From NCBI GenBank assembly GCA_001179505.1, contig CDMY01000347.1:62001-126000 (forward strand): a stretch of DNA of 64,000 nucleotides. The letters are read 5' to 3'. This document shows, piece after piece, positions 2,363-64,000 of this stretch. A model generated the notes under the pieces. It made no database searches. It was not told the DNA's origin and saw only the letters and a program-made list of their open reading frames with translations. The position numbers and the translations under genes were made by a program. Source of the DNA: Vitrella brassicaformis CCMP3155. Its lineage: Eukaryota > Protista > Chromerida. Each line of letters opens with the position of its first letter. The first letter of the stretch is position 1.

Positions 2363-3986
2363 GGAGGGCATGGTGGGTGAGAGAGAGCCAGAGAGAGCGA
2401 CAGAGAAGAGAGTGTGTGTATGCCATGTAACTACCTGCTTCTACTTACTGTGTTCTTGCACTAAGGCAGCGCAACAGCACATTAAGCTAACAGACACATC
2501 GAGAGAGAGATCAAGAGACGGTGTAGCAGACAGACAAGAGAGAGGACTGATGCGCGAGACAGAGAGAGAGAGAGAGAGAGCGCCGGGGAATGACAAGAGC
2601 GTTCTGTAGTCCATATAATGATATATCATGTCTCATTCATTCAGTCATTCATGGGTCGCTGGAGCTCGCTCGTCCAGCCGCACAGACAGCCAGTACTTCC
2701 TGTGGATGAGTGTTATTTTGAATGGACGTGGGGCTCCCTGCCTGGCTGGCTGGCTGGCTGGATGGATGGATGGCTGCTTGCCCTAGCTACTGACTGAGCT
2801 TCTTCCCTTCCTCCCTCCCTCCCTCCCTCCCTACACAAACCTAGTAACCACAAATTGACTCAAGAGGCCCACCACACGTGTGTGTGACGGACGACTGGCT
2901 GTCTCGTCTCTCTGATATGGATTGTTTCTTTCAAGGGCAGGCAGCGACAAGACCACACAGCACACCAATGAATGCATTGTGGTGCTGTGTTCGTTTCCAC
3001 GTACGTTTGTGCATGTATTTTTCGTCCCACAAGGGCGCACGCGCATCATGCCTGCACCGGACAGCACAGCACCCCAGTCACCAGACCTGACGAATGTGTG
3101 TGTGGTGTGATGGATGGGTTTGGTCGTCCGTTGTGTGCATGTGTGGGCGTCCATCCGTGATACACACCCATCCATCCATCCATCCCCCGCCATGGCATCC
3201 ACCCATGTGCCAGCTGTACATATCATACGCACTGCAGACACACACCGACACACAAGGCCAGACAGCACGTGCGCCTCGTTTTTCTCCCTCGCCGCTCGTC
3301 TGTGTGTGTGTGTGTGTGTCTGAGTCTGAGTCTGAGTCTGATGATGGATGGATATTGTCGCAGCCAGCTCCCTGCCTGTTTCAATTTTGGCTGAGGTGGC
3401 GGAGGAGCAGCTGGCTGCACGCGTGACTGCGTCGCACCCACATGACAGACACCAGTGGACCTTGCGAAATGCTTACATGATTCGTGTAAAACACGCCTGC
3501 CCGCGAAGCATGTCCACCGTGGCTCGATGGATGAGGTGAGTGGCGAGAACGACTTCTTTGCCACCCACCTCATCCCGATTCGTTCGAGCTTCAAGGAAAG
3601 GCACGTAGCTGCAGATCCGCCATCGGTGAAGTCAATGCCTTCATCCTTGAGCACCGCCACGACTAGAGGGCACACGGCTCCGTCTCTCCCTCCTCAATAC
3701 TGTTTGTCTTCTTTTGATGTATGCTGATGGTATGAACGAAAATGGAAGAACCACGGTCGCTGGCTGTGGGAACGAGAGGGGAGACACGTCCGTCAATTGA
3801 GCACGAACATCGATATATATATCACTCTATGTTGGGTCGGAGTGAGTGACAGAGTAAAACGGTGAAAGACAATTAATGCATCAGTCTCGCAGACGTCATG
3901 CGAAGAAGCCATCAGGAAAAGCACAACAAACAGGAGGAGGAGACACAGCTCTTATGTCTGAGACACACAAGCATATGAGCTAGGGC

Positions 3987-34282: not shown

Positions 34283-35722
34283 CTAGCCGGGCCCACTAAC
34301 CACCACTCTGTCGGGCCTCCGCCGCTTGACCTTCCGCAGCATCTCGAGGAGCTGCAAACTGTCCAACGTGTCGGTCGACCCTGTGTCGCTCTCGCCCCCA
34401 TCTTGGTCATCATCGCCACCAGCTGCTGCAGCTGCTGCTCTGCTGTCTCGTTTGGTGGCTGCACGGGGGGCCACTCGGTCGTCAGCGGCAGGGGCGGCCG
34501 CCTCAGCCGCACTCGTTGCTAAGCCCTCACCTGAGCCGCCTCCCTGTCGGTGGTCCGCACTAAAAGGACAGGTGAGTAGTGCAGAGAAGCGCAAGTGGAG
34601 TCTTGTTGGTTTACCTGCCCTGCCGCTGCTGCTGCTGGGTGGGAGCGAGGGCGAGAGGCGCGTGCATGCCCGAGAACATCCCAGCGTAGGGGTTTGGCGC
34701 CTCACACGCCCGCACCAATATGCCGTAGGGGATGTTGCCACCAGGTACATTGGACGTCCACTCCTCTGTCACTCGGCCCTGCACGTGTGAGGGAACAACA
34801 CGCGCCAATACGCACACACATATAGGGGAGAAGCAGGCGGGACACGGATGCGATATTCGACTGACCTGCAGGCCTCTCGCAGTGACAGTTCCCCCCTGCC
34901 GTCATGGCAGACGAAGGTATGTGGGTCTATCAGCAGCTGAAACACGGCCTTATACGGGCACCCATCCATCTGCACATAAACACACTCACAGGGACAGAGA
35001 TACTACAAGAGATGGCCCCGCTTGTATGTACTCTCTCATCTCACCACGAAGCGCTCAGCAAAACCTGTTTCGGAGCCCTCAACCAACGGCGAACAGAACG
35101 AGTACCCCGTGTGACCCATGGCCATCCAGCCCCTCTCCCACACGTCAGCGAGTGACGCGCGCCACTTTGGTGCCCGAATGGACCTGTCCTCAACGATCTT
35201 CTTGTAGGTGCCAATCCGCGTCCCGTGGTATGCCGGCACGTAGCTGCCGAACCTCCTTCGCTCGTCATCAGTGAGCTTGATGGCGCGTCGATACCAGCCA
35301 AGGGGAGGGATGTAAGGGACTGGTGGGTCGCCCCTGAGGATACCAACAATACAGAGAGCAAGTCTTCTTCGGGCGGCTCCCTCGTGTGTGTGGCTGGTGT
35401 TCCTGTGCTCTACCTTGTGTACGGTTGGGTCGGCGGACTGTAGCACTTGAGGCAGAAACACTTGTCATGCCTGATGTGATGGAGGGACAAACACATTGCA
35501 GACACAACCGTGCTGAAGAGGTGCAGCGATGGCCCACCCTCTGGCCGTCATCTGCTGACCGCGAGTCGAGTAGATGGGATGGGATATCGAGGAAACGCAT
35601 CACCTATCAAGACAGAAACCACACACAGCAGGCATGCAGATCAGAGAGAAGGCTGTGCGCTTTGCGTTCACCTTCTCGCTTTCCTCCTTCATGCGGCACG
35701 GGCTGTCTTCCCTGCGACTCAT
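34283..35722 (-). CDS. Stand-alone NEURL4-type ADP-ribosyltransferase-fold protein (one frame discrepancy)
   Basis: FLDIPSHLL, CFCLKC..RGDPPVPYIPPLGWYRRAI, AYHGT, FCSP, YKAVFQ, EW..YGILVR match the NEURL4 C-terminal ART-like domain. The junction near 34866/34779 is out of phase by one base unless the C6 run at 34891-34896 is C7. Confidence 0.6.
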
Positions 35723-35803
35723 GCTGATGCTTCTATCACTCGAGCCTCAGGTGGCCTCAGCACAAACCAATTGGAAGTCAGGTGCACGAAGGAGCAGAGC
35801 CGG

Positions 35804-37616
35804 ATGCTGATTGCGCTTCACTGGAGTCCCGATGACGACACTGATACGATGCCTGCTCCCTGGACTGCCATCAGGAGCACCAACACTCGAAAGATCCCAG
35901 TGTTGGAAAGATCCGATTTCAGAAATGGAGGGCGACCCAAAGGTGAGTTCAAGCTTGCACTAAAAAGAGCGCAGAAAAAGTGAAAGAAAAGGTTCCACTG
36001 AGAGACAGTGGCGTTACTGACGTGTCCATTGCTGCATGGGCTCCAGCTGTGTGCCACCGAGTCGTCGAATTGCCCATATATTGATACAATCCGGCTGGCG
36101 AAGCCCACAGAGGCATTTCCCTCGGAAAGGCATTGCAAAGGCACTCAATACCCTTGGATTGACATTGCTCAACGCTCGGGTTCGATGAGGAGGGCCGGGG
36201 CCACCCAAGGGATGGAGGTATGGACGGGATGCATTCCCCGCACTGGTCTATAAATAAATGCATTTGCTGTCGGCATGTGTGGCTGATCAGATGGACGAGT
36301 GCAATGTGGATGCCCGGAAGTCGGCAACACCAAAGCTGTTCGCCAGATTCAAACCGAAGTTTCTCGAGGTGAGACGATTTGAGAAACGGAAAATTAATTG
36401 CTGTGGCTGTCTGCCCATTGCAAGAAGGTCCCCATGGATGGATGTCTGCCTGGCGGCTGCCTGGCGCTACTGGTGAGCGTCGACAGACAGAGGTTTGTCT
36501 GCTTCTGATCTTTGTGGGGACGTTCACCTACCGCTCTCAGTTGCGTCGCAAGTGCCAGTCCGTGAGTGGGAAGGACAAGGTGCAGCTCGAGAAGATGCGC
36601 GACAGCGATGGCTCACGCACCACGTGTGATACGGAGGGCATCGGGGAGGACGGCGTGCACCTCCCTCGCCGCCTCACTCAGGTAGTAAGTGGCTGGGGTA
36701 GGCGCATACTCGTGTCATCCATCCATCCATCCATTGCATTAGTGGACTCTCTGTTGTGTATGTGCCTGCCTGCAGGACTTCGATAGTGTGTTCGAGGAGG
36801 CTGCTGCCGGTTCGTCCAGCGACGAAGGAGCAAAGGGGCCGGCCCTCAAGCAAATCGCCTTGCAGAAACGCATGGATGCCGTCTTGTACGGACACCTGGA
36901 GGGGGTGAGACGAGACACACAAGGCGGCGAGACACCAACCGCCAAACAACATGCACTGTGTCTGCGTGTCTGCGCAGAAGCTGGATCAGGCCTTTCACGG
37001 TCGGGCGCCGAGAGGGTACGATGGCGACAGGGACGGTGGTGATGGCGATGGCGACAGCGACAGCGAGTCGGCTGAGTCGTCGGTGTGGTTCATCTACAAC
37101 CATAGTGAGTTGCCGGAGGGGGGCTACGGGAAGGGCACGGCCCACTGGCTGCCGAAGTGGCGACAGCAGGTGAGGGAGAGGTGGAGACATGAGGGAATGA
37201 AGGGCCTCCCACTCATCAATGGCCGAATGGATGGATGGATAAATGGACTGTGTGTGGTGATGATGCATTCACGCGTGCAGGAGATCGATGCGGCACTTGA
37301 CATGATGCGATTTCTGCGGGACGATGCCGATGCTGAGTCGGTGCCCGTGAGGCGCTGTGAGTTCCATCCACTGAAACCACTCACGTGGGCGACACCTGAA
37401 TGGATGGCCGTGCCGCTCACACTCACTCATTTGTTCATGTCACTTGCTGTCTGTGTGTGTGTGCCTTTCAGGTGATGGAACGCATGCAGCACGTGTGTGG
37501 GGCTGTAAGCTGGCTCGATGGACGGATGGGCAGATGGTGGTGCGACAGACATGGCTCTCTTGCTGCCGCCTGCCTGCATGGTATGTCTGGCTGGCTGACG
37601 TGATGTATAGACGTGA
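35804..37616 (+). CDS. Hypothetical protein (multi-exon orphan)
   Basis: Phase-consistent exon chain: ..RNGGRPK-VALLTCP..GME-MDECNV..FLE-KVPMDG..ALL-LRRKCQ..LTQ-DFDSVF..LEG-KLDQAF..WRQQ-EIDAALDMMRF. Start (35804 or 35849) and end are uncertain. Confidence 0.45.
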
Positions 37617-37850
37617 CACGCGGCGGATGCTTCCCTCCCTCTCCCTCTCTCTCCCTCTCTCTGCGGGGAGGGGCATCCGTGTGAGTGACTCCCTCAGTCC
37701 ATGTGAGTGCTTCACGCGACCGACTTACTCGGTGCATGTCCAGCCATGTCCGGCGACACACAAGAGTCGTTCACGCCTCACTCATTGAATATGTACATGT
37801 ATAATAACCATTACACACAAACTCATCTCATCATCGCACCTCTCTCCTAA

Positions 37851-40800
37851 TTAACTCATCTGAACCCCGCCACCTCCACTATGCCATTGCGCACTCTCCA
37901 CCGGCCGATCATGCTCGTGGCCGTTAGCCCTCCCCTCCCTCATTCCACCACCAGTCAGAAAGACATCATCACCGACGTCCACCAGCTGCGGCGCCGCAGA
38001 CGGCATCTCTGCACTGAACGGGTCAGCTGAGGGATGGTCCATTGCTGTCGGGGGGGAGGGGGGAGGGGCCGGGGAGGGGGAGGGGGATGGTGATTGGAGG
38101 TCTTGCTGGCCCTTGTGCGTGTGCTGCGGTTGCTGTGTGGGTGGGCTGGGCTGGTAGCTGACGCGGTAAAGACCCTCCGCCTCCATCGCAAGAACGAGAC
38201 CACGCTAATTGACACAACAAACAGGCAGACAGGCAAAGCACCATCCATCAGAGGCCGACACATGCAGCGTGACTTATATCTATCACTCACCTGGTCGATG
38301 TGTGCCTGAGTGCCGTAGATGGCCGCGAGATGGGAGGCAACCAGAGGGATCAATATCTCGGCATAATGCTGCACACACATGGACAATGAGTGCGCGTCAC
38401 ATACGCACAGACATCGGCGTGTTCGGATGCTCACCTTGCACATCAGCGTGAATTCGTTTTGCTTGGATGTGGCGGATGAAGTGGTGGCACTGAGGGCGGT
38501 GGGCGACCCCTTCGGTCCCTTGGTGAGCACCTCCCCCTCTCCCCCGATGCAGTCCCTCTGAACGCCCTTGAGCAATGATAGACCACCCATCAAACACTCA
38601 GTGCAGTGCCTGCAAAGACAATGAAAAGCCAATGGGGCAATGGTGTGTTGTGCGTTTCCGTGGGGTGTCCGTCCTTACTTGACGACTAGCGGCCGCAGGC
38701 TGCGCAATGCACACTGCCTGGATTGGATTGGATGGAGAGAGAACAGATAGGAAGGAAGGAGCTATGCGTTCGTGTTTTGGTCAGCCAACGTACCTTAGCT
38801 CGTTGCACATGGCGATCCACTCGTTGGCGAAGATGGCCTGAGAGAGCAAGGCAACGCAATTGCGGGGAGTGAGCGCATTACTCAGCCTCATTGCTGCTTG
38901 CTCACCAGCGGCCGGTGTCGCGTCAACTTCAGGGTCTTCTGGTGCGAGATGGCTGCAGAAAGGAGCAGAGACAACACACGTCAGAAGCAATGGACGGCTT
39001 GTGTGTGAGTCCGTGTGTTCTGTTGCTCACGTGCTGCTGGGTCCGTTTGCGCCTCTGTGCCGTTGTGCGTCTTGTCTGCCTGCTCCTGCTGCGATGGTGG
39101 CTGGGTGCTGAGGGCCGTCGATGGCACCCAGTTGTACCGTTCCAACTCACTGCACGCTCACACAGACACCGAGTTGAGCAGTGGGTGGCCCTTTTCGCCT
39201 GTCATCCAGTTCACGTGTTGAAGTTGAGTAGCGCCCGATCGAGCATGCCGCACACGTAATCCTGCAGACAGGCAGGCAGGCAAGCAGGCAGGCAAGCCAG
39301 TCCCATCAATGCATCAGGAAGATCATTCCTCGGCCCCCTCGCCTCTCGTCCCACCTCCAAATAGAGGTCGAAGATGACAGCAGCGCTTGGGAAGAACTGA
39401 CAGCCCAGCCGCTTGAGTGTCGATGACGTGTGCAGCGTCTGACGGTACAGCGCCGCCAAAGATGACGCGTCCATCGGGGGGGCCGGCACCAGCGTGCCGT
39501 CTGGCATGTCGTCGACACACGAACGGAGAGAGGGAATACCACTCTGTTGTGTGCAATGGGTACCTGGTGATTGGTACAGTGGTTGTGTGGCTGGGTAGAG
39601 GTGGTGGTACTTGGTGGGCAGGAGGGCGGCCCGCAGCAGCTCCACGAACCAGCACACCTGGTCCAGCAGCCACGCTGACAGGGGTCCTTCAGTACCACCA
39701 AACAACGCCCTGTTTGACACATCGGGTCGGGAGAGACTAATGACGTGTGTGGTATCTATCGACTCTCGGTCTGTCTTTTGGTCGGGCTCGGCTCACTTGT
39801 AGTGCATGCCGACGTCGCATATGTGCGTCCGCAGCAGATCAGCCGCGCCACGCAGACCACTGAACGAAGGAACAACCACAGACAGACAGACAGGCCAATC
39901 AGACAGCCCGGCGACCTCAGCGTTGCGTTGCGTGATGTGGCGAAGGTGCGTTCGACTCACTTGGCGCAGTTTGAGATGGTGAGTGTCTCTGTTTGTCTCC
40001 TGTGTGTGTCGACGTAGTCGCTCCGCCTCGCGAGGAATTCGGCCTGCAACTCCTCCTCACTATACACACCCAGACGACGCAAATACCTTAACACCAAACA
40101 CATTCACGGCAGACAGTAGACAGACGTAGATGAGCTCTCTTTGAAGACGTGAAGTGGGTGTGCGTGTGTGGGGGGCAGGGCAGCTCACCCCACGATGCGC
40201 ACACATGCCGGCAGGTGGATGTCGCCCTTGAGCTGATGCAGCAATATACTCTGAAGAGCCAGCTTCTGGTCCGCCACCTGCACACAGACAGACCATACAC
40301 ACACCACACCCATACACGAAGTACGTCCACGAATCACTCTGTGTGTCCACGTCTGTCTATCTGCCAACTTGTTTCTCGAGCATGGTGAGTAGTTCGCTGT
40401 CGTGTCCGCGGCTGCGGAAGAGGTGGAACAGCTGCTGGGCGAAGGCCAGCCCGTCCAAAGTCTCGTCATACTGGCCGTTGCGGCTAGCCGTAGACAGCAG
40501 CTGAGGAATCTCCAAAATCTAGACAGACAGACGCACACGCGCACACGATCAGCACATCCGTCCGTACCAGCGGAAACTTTTGTGTTGAGAGCCATTTGTG
40601 TGTTGGTTCGTCGCTTACCTCTATGAGTGTGTTGTGGTGCTGCAGGAGATTCCTGAGGCCCTGACGCTCACGATCCAAACCGCTGGCCGTCGATTGAAAC
40701 GACTGTCGCATCATCATACACACACACACACACACAGACCATGGGACAGGCGCTTATCCGTCTTTTTGCTGCCTGCCTGACCTGGAGTCCCCTTTGCAGT

Positions 40801-60805: not shown

Positions 60806-61688
60806 ATGGTAAGCTTTGGACAGCTCACACAAAGATCAGGAGAAACCAAGATCGAAACGCAGCGAGGGCGGTGGAGGGAGGCAGGTGTCTGGTGGAGGCA
60901 GGACAGGAGGCAGGGGGAGGGAGGGAGGGAACAGGGGGAGAGGCAGCGAGGCAGATCCAGCGGCGCACACCGACAGACAGACACAGAGAGGCGGGCGGTC
61001 GTGGATGTGGGTGTGTTCTCGCTCTGGGAGTCTGTCACATGTACGGCGCTGCGGTTGTGTCGTGTGTGATGTGTGATGTGTTGTGTTGTGTTGTGTCCCC
61101 AGGTGAACATTCCGAAGACGCGCAACACTTTTTGTAAGCACCCCAAGTGCAATAAGCACACGCCGCACAAGGTGTCGCAGTACAAAAAGGGTGAGTAATA
61201 CGCTACACACACAGCACACAGAGCGACCACACCACACCACACCACACACGAAGGCGGACCTCTGTGTGTGACTGACTGACTGATGTGTCCTGTCTGTCTG
61301 TCTGTCTGTCTGTGTGTCAGGCAAGGAGTCTCGGTTTGCCCAGGGTAAGCGTCGGTACGACATGAAGCAGGCCGGCTTCGGAGGACAAACCAAACCCATC
61401 TTCCACAAAAAGGTAGGGAGGGATGCCATATGGCAGGCACGCAACACACACCCACACACATAGCCAGCCATTGATGGGGGGAGTGAGAGCGAGGGCGGCT
61501 CCACACATGTCTGTCTGTGCGTCCCTGTGTGTGTATGTGCGTCATCTCACCAGGCCAAGACGACCAAGAAGATAGTGTTGAAGTTGGAGTGCACCAAGTG
61601 CAAGGTGAAGCGGCTGCTGCCCATCAAGAGGTGCAAACACTTCGAGCTGGGCGGCGACAAGAAGAGCAGAGGAGGACCCATGTACTAG
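60806..61688 (+). CDS. RPL44: 60S ribosomal protein eL42 (L44/L36a)
   Basis: ATG-only first coding exon, then [73 protein letters not shown]. Pro is present at the cycloheximide-sensitivity position (TKPIF). Confidence 0.98.
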
Positions 61689-62113
61689 ACCAACCAGGCC
61701 GCGTCGTCAACCGACCAACCGAAGGGCGGGCTGTCTTGGTGTCACGCAGTGGGTCTGGGTGTGTGTGGTGGTGGTGGTGGTGTGCGTGGCCAATGTGAGA
61801 GGGAGTGCGTGGCCCAATACTGTCGTGCCGTGCGTGGTGCACAGTAGATGGGTGGATGTGGACGGACGGATGGACCTTTTGAATTATGCGACTTGGCCTG
61901 TGCGCCTGCGTGGCTGGCCGGGCCGCCCCCATGTGACGGTTGAATAAAGCTCGTTGCATGCCCGGGTTCATGAGTCATCACACCACCAGATCGTCTTATC
62001 CCTGTCTGTGGTGGCACACTTTTCGCGTTGAAACAGGGCTGGAAAGGCACATCGTACACATCAGATCAGCCACACACCAAATAAAGGGGCGAGGGCGTCC
62101 TCCCGTCCAGCCG

Positions 62114-64000
62114 TCATCTCAGTGGAGGGATGGTCATGTTGAACACAGCACCCTCAGCATTGTGCACACCGCAGAGGCCCCCAAGCTCCTCGCACTGCCG
62201 TGCCTCGGGCCGCCACTCGTACCACACCTCCATCCGCGACACATCCACGCGGCGACGCATCGACACGCTGACACACAGAAGAGCATGAGAGCAGCCACAC
62301 CGTCATGCGACTCGAGCACTTGTCTCACTCCCCGCCTGGCCTGATTGACCGCCAAGGTACCTGAGAGTGTCATTTTGTGAGAGCATGAGGGGGCGCACGA
62401 ATGGGACGAACAGCGGAGCGAACAGCTGCCCGATGACCGACTCCCCGGGGAGTGTGGACACACGGACGTCCTTGTAGAGGGTCGCTTTGAAGAACTTCGA
62501 GAGGCCGTGCACCACTGCAGCAACACTCATGGTGAAGTCACCCTGATTGATGAGACAGACACGCAGACACGGACAGGCGCACATTCACACACACAGGTGG
62601 TCGGTCACTTGACGACTGAGTGGATGTGTCGGCCAGCGCCACGCACCTGGAATGACCGCTCTCCCGCCTGAATGGTCGTGAAGGTGCTGTCAGGGTGGTG
62701 GAACGACCACACCTTCTCGACACGCACCTTGCCGGAGGATTCCCTGCATCAAGGAACGCAGCACATCCTCACTGGACTACAGCCGACGTGTGCCGCTCCT
62801 TCCTCTGCTGACACACCCTCCCGCCCACCTGGCAGGGAAGAACTGTGCCTTGCTGTGCACTAAAAAGGGCGTCTGCAACAGGTCCTGCGTCTGTGCCAGC
62901 CTCGTCCACAGGCGGGCGGTGCTGACGGGCGTCACGAAGGTGCTGTACTCGCTGGGGATGACCACACCATCGCGAGCCAACAGACTGCCGCCCTTCAAGG
63001 CAACTGATGCGCGCGATAGAGACAGACGACACACATCCGTCCCATTCATGTGTGTGGGTGAGTGGATGGTTTGCTAAGGCACCGTACCGTTGATGTATTC
63101 GGGTGAGTGGTGGTTTTCGGCGGGGGGGGCCACCAGCACGTGAGCCCTCTTGCCATGCGGCAGCGAAAATGTCCTCAGATCGCCTGGGGTGACCTTCACT
63201 TTGCGCCACATCAGGTCGCCAGCGCCGCTGACACGCTTCCTGAACACGAGGTGGGCATTGCATTCATCGCAGTGCCTTGTGGAAATGTGACCCTGTGTGT
63301 CTCTGTATGGGTACCTGAGTGCGTCGACTGCCTCGTCAGAGCCCTCAACCACATGAACATCCCACTTCTGCACAGTCACTCAGACAGAAGCAAGCTTGGC
63401 ACCTTTGTTAACAGAAGCAAAAGCGAAATCCGCATGTCAGTCAGATTGCACCTTGATCTTGGCCTTGCTGACGGCATTGAGCACCGACTGCACGAGAGCA
63501 CCGCGGCCTCCGCCGCTGACCTGATCCATCCATCCATCCATCCACGACAACAACACAAATGCACACACCGATGCCACGACTGTCTTTGCATCCTTAACTC
63601 ACCACAATGGTGGCGTCCAGGTGTCCGGCCACCAGTCGGTCCGAGAGGCATCGTGCGAGGGCCTCCTCGTACAGCATGTCGGTGGCGGGGTCGCTGTGGA
63701 AGTAATCGGCCGCTGACTCGTCAACCTGCTCAGGGATGGGCGCCAGTAGCGACACCAGCACGTCCTGATACAGAACGTCGAGAGCCCGCTCGACCTTCTC
63801 CGCCTGCACAACACCACAGGAGAGTGCATCCATGTTTCGGAGACCTCTGGTGTCTTTCCTCCCTCCCACCTTTGTGGCCGGCTGTCTCCTCTCCTCTTCT
63901 TGGGCAACCGTCTCAGCCACAGCCGAGCCACACTCGGCCAACAGACTCTGACCAGGGGAGCCGACAACTGGGTAGCCGTAGCCCTCTCCCTCATACTCGA
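62114..64000 (-). CDS. Divergent PRMT5-like protein, C-terminal part (5' end outside window), catalytic glutamates absent
   Basis: Co-linear with PRMT5: DYFHSDP..LYEEALARCLSDR, TIVVSGGGRGALV, HVVEGS, GDLR, VLVAPPAENHHSPE, DGVVIPSEYSTFVTP, VVHGLSKFFKATLYKDV, PLFVPFVRP, VWYEW, VHNAEG; stop at 62114. Confidence 0.8.

What the first reader, a model, noticed from the sequence alone, without database searches (positions are those of the whole stretch)
62114..64000. PRMT5 pseudoenzyme candidate: the double-E loop is destroyed in an otherwise maintained gene
Seen: PRMT5 IIVSELLGSFADNELSPE corresponds here to VLVAPPAENHHSPE (about 63100-63140). Both catalytic glutamates (human E435 and E444) are gone with a deletion of about 4 aa, and the FSW loop is replaced. 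The specificity Phe (DYFHSDP), the Gly-rich motif I (GGGRGAL) and the post-I Glu remain, and the frame and splice sites are intact. Known: trypanosomes use catalytically dead prozyme paralogs to activate PRMT1 and AdoMetDC. Inference: a SAM-binding scaffold or allosteric partner of the true PRMT5, conceivably replacing MEP50.
Basis: partly seen in the sequence, partly recalled or inferred. Interest (0 to 1): 0.7.

Follow-up and report, generated by a model that had tools for sequence, protein, structure and literature searches.

The report
Catalytically dead PRMT5 paralog in Vitrella
The alga Vitrella brassicaformis expresses a correctly spliced second copy of the arginine methyltransferase PRMT5 that keeps the enzyme's fold but has lost its catalytic residues and gained a hydrophobic N-terminal helix. 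It is probably a non-catalytic "pseudoenzyme" found so far in this species only.

Summary
The minus-strand gene at window 62114 to beyond 64000 (11 exons, 783 aa, P0001) is a true PRMT5 homologue. Pfam scores PRMT5_C at 7.8e-29 and PRMT5 at 3.3e-15, and the AF2 model matches human PRMT5 with a TM-score of 0.77-0.80.

The double-E loop reads VLVAPPAENHHSPE. Both glutamates are gone (E435P, E444H), four residues are deleted, and the FSW loop is replaced. The cofactor contacts Y324 and K393, and the invariant pocket residues K333 and Y334, are also lost. Motif I, E392, D419 and F327 remain.

Spliced transcript contigs from three studies confirm every intron. No alternative exon encodes a double-E motif.

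A canonical PRMT5 with an intact loop lies on another contig. All eight of the paralog's introns in the homologous region share position and phase with introns of that gene.

The ORF is stop-free where about 24 stops would be expected. Invariant residues are kept at 76% outside the active-site segments and 37% inside them (p=1.7e-4).

No orthologue was found anywhere, so dN/dS cannot be computed. The prozyme or MEP50-replacement role is untested, and the N-terminal hydrophobic helix (aa 73-91) may argue against it.

Verdict: an expressed, maintained PRMT5 pseudoenzyme of unknown partner. It is a new variant of a known kind.

The parts
62114..62267 (-). Exon 11 (last): end of the beta-barrel (VWYEW at 62207-62227) and the stop codon at 62114-62116.
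   Evidence: Spliced contigs in X1 and X7; PRMT5_C match; coordinates.
62361..62542 (-). Exon 10: beta-barrel. The FSW/THW-equivalent loop is replaced by GQLFAPLFVP (62402-62431).
   Evidence: PRMT5_C scores 2.9e-9 on this exon alone.
62647..62743 (-). Exon 9: beta-barrel.
   Evidence: Joints 1041/1146 and 1242/1328; model.
62829..63003 (-). Exon 8: end of the Rossmann fold and start of the beta-barrel (DGVVIPSEYSTFVTPVS).
63088..63239 (-). Exon 7: motif II (GDLR, 63167-63190) and the destroyed double-E loop (VLVAPPAENHHSPE, 63098-63139).
   Evidence: This exon has no PF05185 match.
63315..63367 (-). Exon 6: the post-I strand with the retained Glu (HVVEGSD, E521 = human E392).
63452..63520 (-). 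Exon 5: motif I, G-G-G-R-G (63491-63517).
63603..63803 (-). Exon 4: the N-terminal helices of the methyltransferase domain. F327 is kept (ADYFHSDP, 63687-63710). Y324, K333 and Y334 are lost.
63870..64000 (-). Exon 3, the part inside the window. The exon runs on to window-equivalent 64867 and encodes the TIM barrel. Exons 2 and 1 lie at window-equivalent 64933-65092 and 65182-65292 (L003 3433-3592 and 3682-3792). They encode the start codon and the hydrophobic helix (aa 73-91).

Best explanation
This is a single-copy, expressed and evolutionarily maintained paralog of PRMT5 in Vitrella brassicaformis that can no longer methylate arginine. It arose by DNA-level duplication of an intron-containing PRMT5 gene. 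It kept the three-domain PRMT5 scaffold (TIM barrel, Rossmann fold, beta-barrel/oligomerisation domain), diverged extremely fast, lost the arginine-binding and catalytic elements, and acquired a 160-aa N-terminal extension with one strongly hydrophobic helix.

Shown here: homology, fold, loss of catalytic residues, expression and splicing, an open frame, and preferential retention of non-active-site invariant residues.

Inferred: it works non-catalytically, as a binding or scaffolding protein built on the PRMT5 fold, possibly tethered to a membrane. Its partner is unknown; the canonical PRMT5 is one candidate.
For: - Family and fold: full-length Pfam gives PRMT5_C 101 bits and PRMT5 56.8 bits, both above their cut-offs. 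The AF2 model (pLDDT 72, pTM 0.69) matches 4gqb_A at E=7e-42 with TMt 0.77-0.80.
- Lost residues: E435P, E444H, deletion of 437-440, W579F, F580A, Y324A, K333T, Y334D and K393G. All are invariant in 21 canonical PRMT5s. The roles of Y324, E392, K393, D419, M420, F327, E435, E444 and W579 are taken from PMC9228412 and PMC13430611.
- Pattern of loss: invariant residues inside active-site segments are kept 18 and lost 31. Elsewhere they are kept 35 and lost 11 (Fisher p=1.7e-4). Divergent canonical members used as controls show the opposite pattern.
- Expression: spliced contigs from three studies give identical joints, with no differing letters. The resulting model equals database protein P0001.
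- Maintained coding sequence: no stop in 783 codons against about 24 expected (P about 4e-11). GC3 is 0.74 against an intron GC of 0.55.
- Origin: 8 of 8 introns in the homologous region share position and phase with the canonical gene on C206.
- Copy number: the genome holds only these two PRMT5 loci.
Against: - No orthologue was found, so purifying selection cannot be measured by dN/dS. The searches were the HMMER scan of 1.84 billion representatives with the N-terminal 443 aa, word searches and a metagenome scan.
- The branch is 7-10 substitutions per site, which could also reflect relaxed constraint.
- The Rossmann-core SAM contacts are retained, so residual or altered activity is not excluded.
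- The active-site segments used in the enrichment test were defined by me from textbook PRMT motifs after I had seen the list of losses.
- No binding partner has been shown.
Confidence: 0.7

Rival explanations
1. Prozyme model. The dead paralog hetero-oligomerises with the canonical Vitrella PRMT5 through the conserved head-to-tail PRMT5 interfaces and stabilises or activates it, in the manner of TbPRMT1 PRO, possibly taking over the role of MEP50. This is a special case of the best explanation, not an exclusive alternative.
For: - An active paralog coexists in the genome.
- The beta-barrel/oligomerisation domain is the best-conserved part: 22 of 32 invariant residues kept, and PRMT5_C at 7.8e-29.
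- There is precedent in the same superfamily. TbPRMT1 ENZ-PRO forms the canonical antiparallel dimer, and PRO lacks the double-E and THW elements and does not bind AdoHcy (PMC12925635).
Against: - There is no interaction evidence.
- The TIM barrel, which forms half of the PRMT5 dimer contact and the MEP50 site, is the least conserved domain. It falls below the Pfam cut-off at 26.9 against 30.2 bits.
- The N-terminal hydrophobic helix (Kyte-Doolittle 2.36 over 19 aa) has the more positive flank on its N side. If that makes it a type II anchor, the PRMT5-like body would lie in a lumen, away from cytosolic or nuclear PRMT5.
- Whether Vitrella has MEP50 was not tested.
Confidence: 0.25
2. Neofunctionalised active enzyme. 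The protein still binds SAM through the intact Rossmann core and methylates a different acceptor, not a guanidinium held by two glutamates. The remodelled loops form a new substrate pocket.
For: - Motif I (G-G-G-R-G), E392 and D419, the universal class I methyltransferase SAM contacts, are all retained, as is F327.
- The frame is maintained.
Against: - Four invariant residues of the cofactor pocket are lost (Y324, K333, Y334, K393).
- Eleven of 17 invariant residues in the N-terminal lid helices (human 304-334) are lost.
- The remodelled loop is modelled with low confidence (residues 572-574 below pLDDT 50).
- No new conserved catalytic motif can be recognised, because there are no orthologues.
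Confidence: 0.1
3. Decaying relic. The gene is a transcribed duplicate on its way to loss, with no function. The catalytic lesion is simply the first visible sign of decay.
For: - The branch is extremely long.
- It is an orphan found in one species only.
Against: - It shares only 29% identity with its paralog yet has no stop, no frameshift and ten intact splice sites over 2.35 kb of CDS.
- Coding-type GC3 is maintained.
- Scaffold invariant residues are kept at 76%, against 29% overall identity.
- The predicted fold is intact.
Confidence: 0.1

Closest known systems
Canonical PRMT5 (human PRMT5, PDB 4GQB; Vitrella's own copy on G000:C206)
   Same: - The same three-domain architecture and fold.
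- Motif I, E392, D419 and F327, and the C-terminal VWYEW strand.
- All eight introns of the homologous region are shared with the Vitrella canonical gene.
   Different: - Only 26-29% identity.
[quoted passage not shown]
- Y324, K333, Y334 and K393 are lost.
- It has an extra 160-aa N-terminal extension with a hydrophobic helix.
- Its branch is roughly 20 to 35 times the median PRMT5 branch.
Trypanosoma brucei PRMT1 prozyme (TbPRMT1 PRO, formerly PRMT3)
   Same: It is a catalytically dead PRMT paralog that lacks the double-E and THW elements and coexists with an active paralog. It is the model for how a dead PRMT can work.
   Different: It is a type I PRMT, with no TIM barrel. Its heterotetramer with the enzyme and its loss of cofactor binding are shown experimentally. 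Nothing of that kind is shown here.
Acanthamoeba castellanii ACA1_061190 (noted in PMC12925635)
   Same: It is a PRMT5-like (type II cluster) protein reported to lack motif II and the double-E loop, next to a canonical PRMT5. It is uncharacterised.
   Different: The Vitrella protein keeps motif II (GDLR). The HMMER search gave no hint of a shared clade.
C-terminal dead methyltransferase modules of PRMT7 and PRMT9
   Same: They are inactive PRMT modules that serve as the structural partner of an active module.
   Different: They are fused in one chain with the active module. Here the dead copy is a separate gene.
PRMT8 (membrane-bound through N-terminal myristoylation)
   Same: It is a PRMT whose N-terminal end attaches it to a membrane (PMC10908127).
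   Different: PRMT8 is an active type I enzyme with a lipid anchor. Here the anchor would be a predicted hydrophobic helix on a dead type II fold, and membrane association is only inferred.

Membership tests
PRMT5 family (type II protein arginine methyltransferase) | Rossmann methyltransferase domain matching Pfam PF05185 above its cut-off | tested here: met
   56.8 bits against a 22.9 cut-off, E=3.3e-15. The match stops at profile position 140 of 171, where the double-E loop begins.
PRMT5 family (type II protein arginine methyltransferase) | C-terminal beta-barrel/oligomerisation domain (PF17286) | tested here: met
   101.2 bits against a 30.3 cut-off, covering profile positions 1-165 of 167.
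PRMT5 family (type II protein arginine methyltransferase) | N-terminal TIM barrel (PF17285) | tested here: inconclusive
   26.9 bits, below the 30.2 cut-off. However, the AF2 model aligns over about 675 columns with full-length human PRMT5, and the Atlas structure search aligns residues 127-779.
PRMT5 family (type II protein arginine methyltransferase) | Motif I GxGxG, the post-I acidic residue and the motif II Asp (core SAM contacts) | tested here: met
   G493, G495, R496, G497, E521 and D551 align with human G365, G367, R368, G369, E392 and D419.
PRMT5 family (type II protein arginine methyltransferase) | Double-E loop with two invariant glutamates (human E435, E444) | tested here: not met
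   E435P, E444H and a 4-residue deletion. Twelve of 16 invariant positions in 434-451 are lost. Transcripts confirm the sequence.
PRMT5 family (type II protein arginine methyltransferase) | FSW (THW-equivalent) loop with W579 | tested here: not met
   S578 is deleted, W579 is F and F580 is A.
PRMT5 family (type II protein arginine methyltransferase) | PRMT5-specific residues of the cofactor pocket: Y324, K333, Y334, K393 | tested here: not met
   Y324A, K333T, Y334D and K393G. Roles come from PMC9228412 and PMC13430611.
PRMT5 family (type II protein arginine methyltransferase) | Symmetric dimethylarginine-forming activity | not testable with these tools
   Needs a biochemical assay.
Prozyme-type pseudoenzyme (dead paralog that activates its active paralog) | Catalytic residues lost while the fold is retained | tested here: met
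Prozyme-type pseudoenzyme (dead paralog that activates its active paralog) | An active paralog is encoded in the same genome | tested here: met
   Canonical PRMT5 on G000:C206 with an intact SELLGSFGDNELSPE and MFSWFP.
Prozyme-type pseudoenzyme (dead paralog that activates its active paralog) | Physical hetero-oligomer with the active paralog and stimulation of its activity | not testable with these tools
   Requires co-purification and activity assays. No usable computational evidence was obtained.

The most novel reading that the evidence does not exclude
The protein is a membrane-tethered pseudoenzyme on the PRMT5 fold. The dead PRMT5 body still recognises arginine/glycine-rich clients or the canonical PRMT5 itself. 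The N-terminal helix anchors it to an endomembrane. It would therefore either recruit or sequester methylosome components at a membrane, or, if the helix acts as a type II signal anchor, work inside the secretory or plastid-bound lumen, where no PRMT is known. Either case would be the first PRMT5-derived pseudoenzyme with a defined non-catalytic role.
Probability: 0.15. Interest if true: 0.75.

Novelty: new variant of a known kind. Interest (0 to 1): 0.5.

Why it matters
Dead paralogs that regulate their active relatives are known for type I PRMTs (the trypanosome PRMT1 prozyme) and for DNMT3L. No PRMT5-derived pseudoenzyme has been characterised.

[quoted passage not shown] PRMT5 is being pursued as a drug target in those parasites, and its cofactor requirements outside animals are unclear.

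A maintained PRMT5 scaffold without catalytic residues, carrying a putative membrane helix, would give a natural experiment on what the PRMT5 fold does apart from catalysis. Limits on its weight: it is seen in one species, it has no orthologue, and there are no functional data.

Tried and rejected
- **Word-index protein searches.** The 443-aa open stretch found nothing. Residues 425-783 of P0001 found only the protein itself.
- **Exhaustive HMMER search with the N-terminal 443 aa.** Apart from the protein itself it returned only weak hits (E 2e-6 to 9e-4), almost all ordinary PRMT5s or fragments of them. The best-looking divergent hit (P0006, on contig L011) turned out to keep an intact double-E loop, so it is not an orthologue of the dead copy.
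- **Metagenome scan with P0001.** No relative was found. dN/dS could therefore not be computed.
- **Phylogeny.** The paralog's branch is 6.8-10 substitutions per site and its position is unresolved. The AU test of a paralog + Vitrella-canonical clade gave p=0.04, which I do not trust with such a branch. A second AU test did not finish. Rows left out of the second tree: envL011, P0003, P0010.
- **Complex prediction.** I tested paralog residues 160-783 against the single-exon TIM barrel of the canonical PRMT5. The tool returned 'no answer' (score 0.00, controls not run). This is no evidence for or against binding.
- **Scan for a cryptic alternative double-E exon.** I scanned all three coding-strand frames of the whole gene region, including the two flanking introns. 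Nothing was found.
- **Assembly error in the 8-C run inside the lesion.** Rejected, because four independent contigs agree.
- **Retrogene origin.** Rejected, because of the shared introns.
- **Joined gene models.** The spliced model of the canonical PRMT5 on C206 was joined only inside scripts, for alignment and trees. It was never sent to a search or fold tool; the only tool call that took canonical PRMT5 sequence was the complex prediction, which used its first exon by DNA reference. The paralog's spliced product was used in tools only as database protein P0001. Before P0001 was found, the paralog was searched by exon or ORF reference.

Full report
**Identity of the genome.** The window is G000:C347:62001-126000, in a genome of 72,700,666 bases in 1064 contigs. 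These are exactly the figures published for Vitrella brassicaformis CCMP3155: "1064 Vitrella scaffolds, 72,700,666 bp" (PMC4501334). The organism is therefore this chromerid alga, a photosynthetic relative of the Apicomplexa.

**Gene structure and expression.** The gene lies on the minus strand and runs past the window edge, so I fetched C347:123501-133500 as L003 (window position = L003 position + 61500).
- Laying public runs on L003:550-4300 gave one spliced contig in each of three runs from three different studies (X1, X6, X7). All three show the same joints. One contig of a fourth run (X3) is unspliced and collinear with the genome.
- No differing letters and no indels were reported.
- After adjusting for the stated cut ambiguity, nine introns are GT-AG and the 5'-most is GC-AG.
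- The joints give 11 exons. In window coordinates they are 62114-62267, 62361-62542, 62647-62743, 62829-63003, 63088-63239, 63315-63367, 63452-63520, 63603-63803 and 63870-64867, then 64933-65092 and 65182-65292 beyond the window.
- The translated model is identical over its 743 residues, counted from the second in-frame Met, to database protein P0001. P0001 (783 aa) starts at an upstream in-frame ATG. A transcript-derived cluster member (P0013) has the same sequence.
- The double-E exon (63088-63239) appears in every spliced contig as it does in the genome.
- A scan of all three coding-strand frames over the whole gene region, including the two flanking introns, found no cryptic double-E-like motif.
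- The refutation condition 'alternative exon restoring SELLG..NE' is therefore not met in the available data. Contig data can miss rare isoforms.

**Is it PRMT5?** Yes.
- Exon by exon the Pfam signal is weak, but full-length P0001 gives PRMT5_C at 7.8e-29 (101 bits) and PRMT5 at 3.3e-15 (56.8 bits), both above their curated cut-offs. PRMT5_TIM scores 3.5e-6, at 26.9 bits just below its 30.2 cut-off.
- The PF05185 match ends at profile position 140 of 171, which is where the double-E loop begins.
- phmmer against PDB sequences finds only PRMT5 chains.
- An AlphaFold2 model built on a 36-sequence alignment (A1) has mean pLDDT 72.3 and pTM 0.69.
- The best Foldseek matches of that model are human and Xenopus PRMT5 (4gqb_A E=7e-42, TMt 0.77-0.80, about 675 aligned columns). 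Type I PRMTs follow far behind at 1e-15. The ESM Atlas look-up agrees.

**The lesion.** I aligned P0001 with 21 canonical PRMT5s from animals, plants, green algae, stramenopiles, Amoebozoa and uncultured protists, plus Vitrella's own canonical copy.
- Opposite the invariant S-E-L-L-G-S-F-x-D-N-E-L-S-P-E the paralog reads A-P-P-(4-residue gap)-A-E-N-H-H-S-P-E. In human numbering this is E435P, L436P, deletion of 437-440, D442E, E444H and L445H.
- In the FSW loop, S578 is deleted, W579 is F and F580 is A.
All of these positions are invariant in the canonical set.
- Published structure descriptions give the roles. Y324 and E392 bind the ribose hydroxyls. K393, D419 and M420 line the purine pocket. 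F327, E435, E444 and W579 form the arginine pocket (PMC9228412; PMC13430611).
- Three of the four arginine-pocket residues are therefore gone. About half of the cofactor contacts are gone too.
- The universal class I methyltransferase contacts survive: motif I G-G-G-R-G, E392 and D419. F327 also survives.
- Arginine methylation is very unlikely. SAM binding cannot be judged from sequence.

**The canonical partner gene.** Whole-genome searches with the three PRMT5 Pfam models and with P0001 find exactly two loci: this one, and C206:~35290-38360 on the plus strand.
- The C206 gene has TIM at 8.6e-54 and an intact SELLGSFGDNELSPECLDG and MFSWFP.
- I built a homology-guided 14-exon, 649-aa model of it inside scripts only.
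- It is 43-51% identical to other PRMT5s. The paralog is 24-29% identical to all of them, and closest to Vitrella's own copy.

**Origin.** All eight paralog introns that fall in the homologous region coincide in alignment position (to within one gap-shifted column) and in phase with introns of the canonical gene. The canonical gene has five more.
- This rules out a retrogene and shows duplication of an intron-bearing PRMT5 gene.
- In the canonical gene the double-E loop is a 58-nt micro-exon, and the phase-0 intron just before SELLG is one of those the paralog lacks.
- The paralog's 4-residue deletion and the A-P-P replacement therefore sit exactly at a lost intron site. An imprecise intron loss is a plausible cause, but this is speculation.
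- Trees cannot date the duplication. The paralog's terminal branch is 6.8-10 substitutions per site against a median of 0.29-0.36, and its placement is unsupported.
- Dinoflagellates are reported to have an expanded PRMT5 family (PMC4751559), so paralogy in this part of the tree is not unusual.

**Is it maintained?** Direct dN/dS is impossible because no orthologue exists in the data I could reach.
- The exhaustive HMMER search of 1.84 billion representatives with the N-terminal 443 aa found only the protein itself below 1e-10.
- Two word searches and a metagenome scan were blank.
- The limit of this evidence is that the C-terminal half was searched only with the less sensitive word index.

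The indirect evidence for maintenance is nevertheless strong.
- At 29% identity to its paralog, the 2352-nt CDS has no stop. The other two frames have 19 and 20 stops, and shuffles average 23.8, giving P about 4e-11.
- All ten splice sites work.
- GC3 is 0.74 against an intron GC of 0.55.
- Residues invariant across canonical PRMT5s are kept at 76% (35 of 46) outside the active-site segments and at only 37% (18 of 49) inside them (Fisher p=1.7e-4).
- Long-branch canonical PRMT5s used as controls show the opposite: their active sites are almost untouched.
- This reversed pattern is what a pseudoenzyme that keeps its fold but not its chemistry should show. My caveat is that I fixed the segment boundaries from standard PRMT motifs after I had seen the losses.

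**New feature: the N-terminal extension.** The TIM barrel starts near residue 165, with GFDFL at 193-197. About 160 residues with no Pfam match precede it.
- The extension consists of an Arg/Glu-rich stretch, a Ser run, and then a segment with Kyte-Doolittle hydropathy 2.36 over 19 residues (aa 73-91).
- AF2 models that segment as part of a long helix (68-99, pLDDT about 70).
- Exons 2 and 3 encode it, and the same spliced contigs join them to the rest of the gene.
- It could be a transmembrane or signal-anchor helix. The N-side flank is the more positive one, which by the positive-inside rule would put the PRMT5-like body on the lumenal side. I could not run dedicated predictors, so this stays an inference.
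- None of the canonical PRMT5s in the alignment has such a segment.

**Mechanism.** I commit to a maintained, catalytically dead PRMT5 scaffold acting by binding rather than catalysis (confidence 0.7).
- The prozyme idea is that it pairs with canonical PRMT5 as TbPRMT1 PRO pairs with ENZ. The co-existing active paralog and the relatively good conservation of the oligomerisation barrel make it attractive.
- It is unproven, the poorly conserved TIM barrel weakens it, and the putative membrane helix possibly weakens it too. I give it about 0.25.
- A neofunctionalised enzyme and a decaying relic each get about 0.1.

**Comparison and novelty.** Dead PRMT paralogs or modules are known: TbPRMT1 PRO, and the second modules of PRMT7 and PRMT9 (PMC10908127).
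- A 2026 review notes in passing an Acanthamoeba PRMT5-like protein that lacks motif II and the double-E loop (PMC12925635).
- My literature searches found no characterised PRMT5 pseudoenzyme.
- This finding is therefore a new variant of a known kind. What stands out is its extreme divergence, its restriction to one species so far, and the hydrophobic N-terminal helix.
It is not independent evidence.

Noticed in passing
window 61073-61688 (+): A ribosomal protein L44e (eL42) gene in at least three exons lies convergent with the PRMT5 paralog. Pfam Ribosomal_L44 scores 4e-12 and 5e-10 on two exons. The two stop codons are about 430 bp apart. One 5.5-kb transcript contig (X7) spans both genes, which suggests overlapping or abutting 3' ends.
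   Followed up: partly
L004 6187-6244 (G000:C206:37187-37244, +): In the canonical Vitrella PRMT5 the whole double-E loop (SELLGSFGDNELSPECLD) is encoded by a 58-nt micro-exon. The intron in front of it is one that the dead paralog lacks, at exactly the site of the paralog's 4-residue deletion.
   Followed up: partly
window-equivalent 65093-65181 (L003 3593-3681, minus strand), outside the window: The 5'-most intron of the paralog uses GC-AG rather than GT-AG. Spliced contigs in three runs support it.
   Followed up: yes
L011 612-3016 (environmental contig, Logan SRR32281773): This is a very divergent PRMT5 from an uncultured eukaryote, with long low-complexity inserts in the Rossmann and barrel domains. 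It still has an intact double-E loop (SELLGSFGDNESSPE). Its TIM barrel resembles the Vitrella paralog's slightly more than canonical ones do (36% identity over 78 aa).
   Followed up: partly
L003 3881-4236 (window-equivalent 65381-65736): Just upstream of the paralog's 5' end, short contigs (189 and 197 nt) break at the same places in every run and have much higher depth in X6. Loose ends occur at 3878 and 4236. This may be a repeat or another transcript's end. It was not examined.
   Followed up: no
window 63520-63545 and 61765-61790: There are simple repeats here: a (CCAT)n run inside intron 4 of the paralog, and a (GGT)n run in the intergenic 3' region. The reads tool skipped the first as a repeat.
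   Followed up: no
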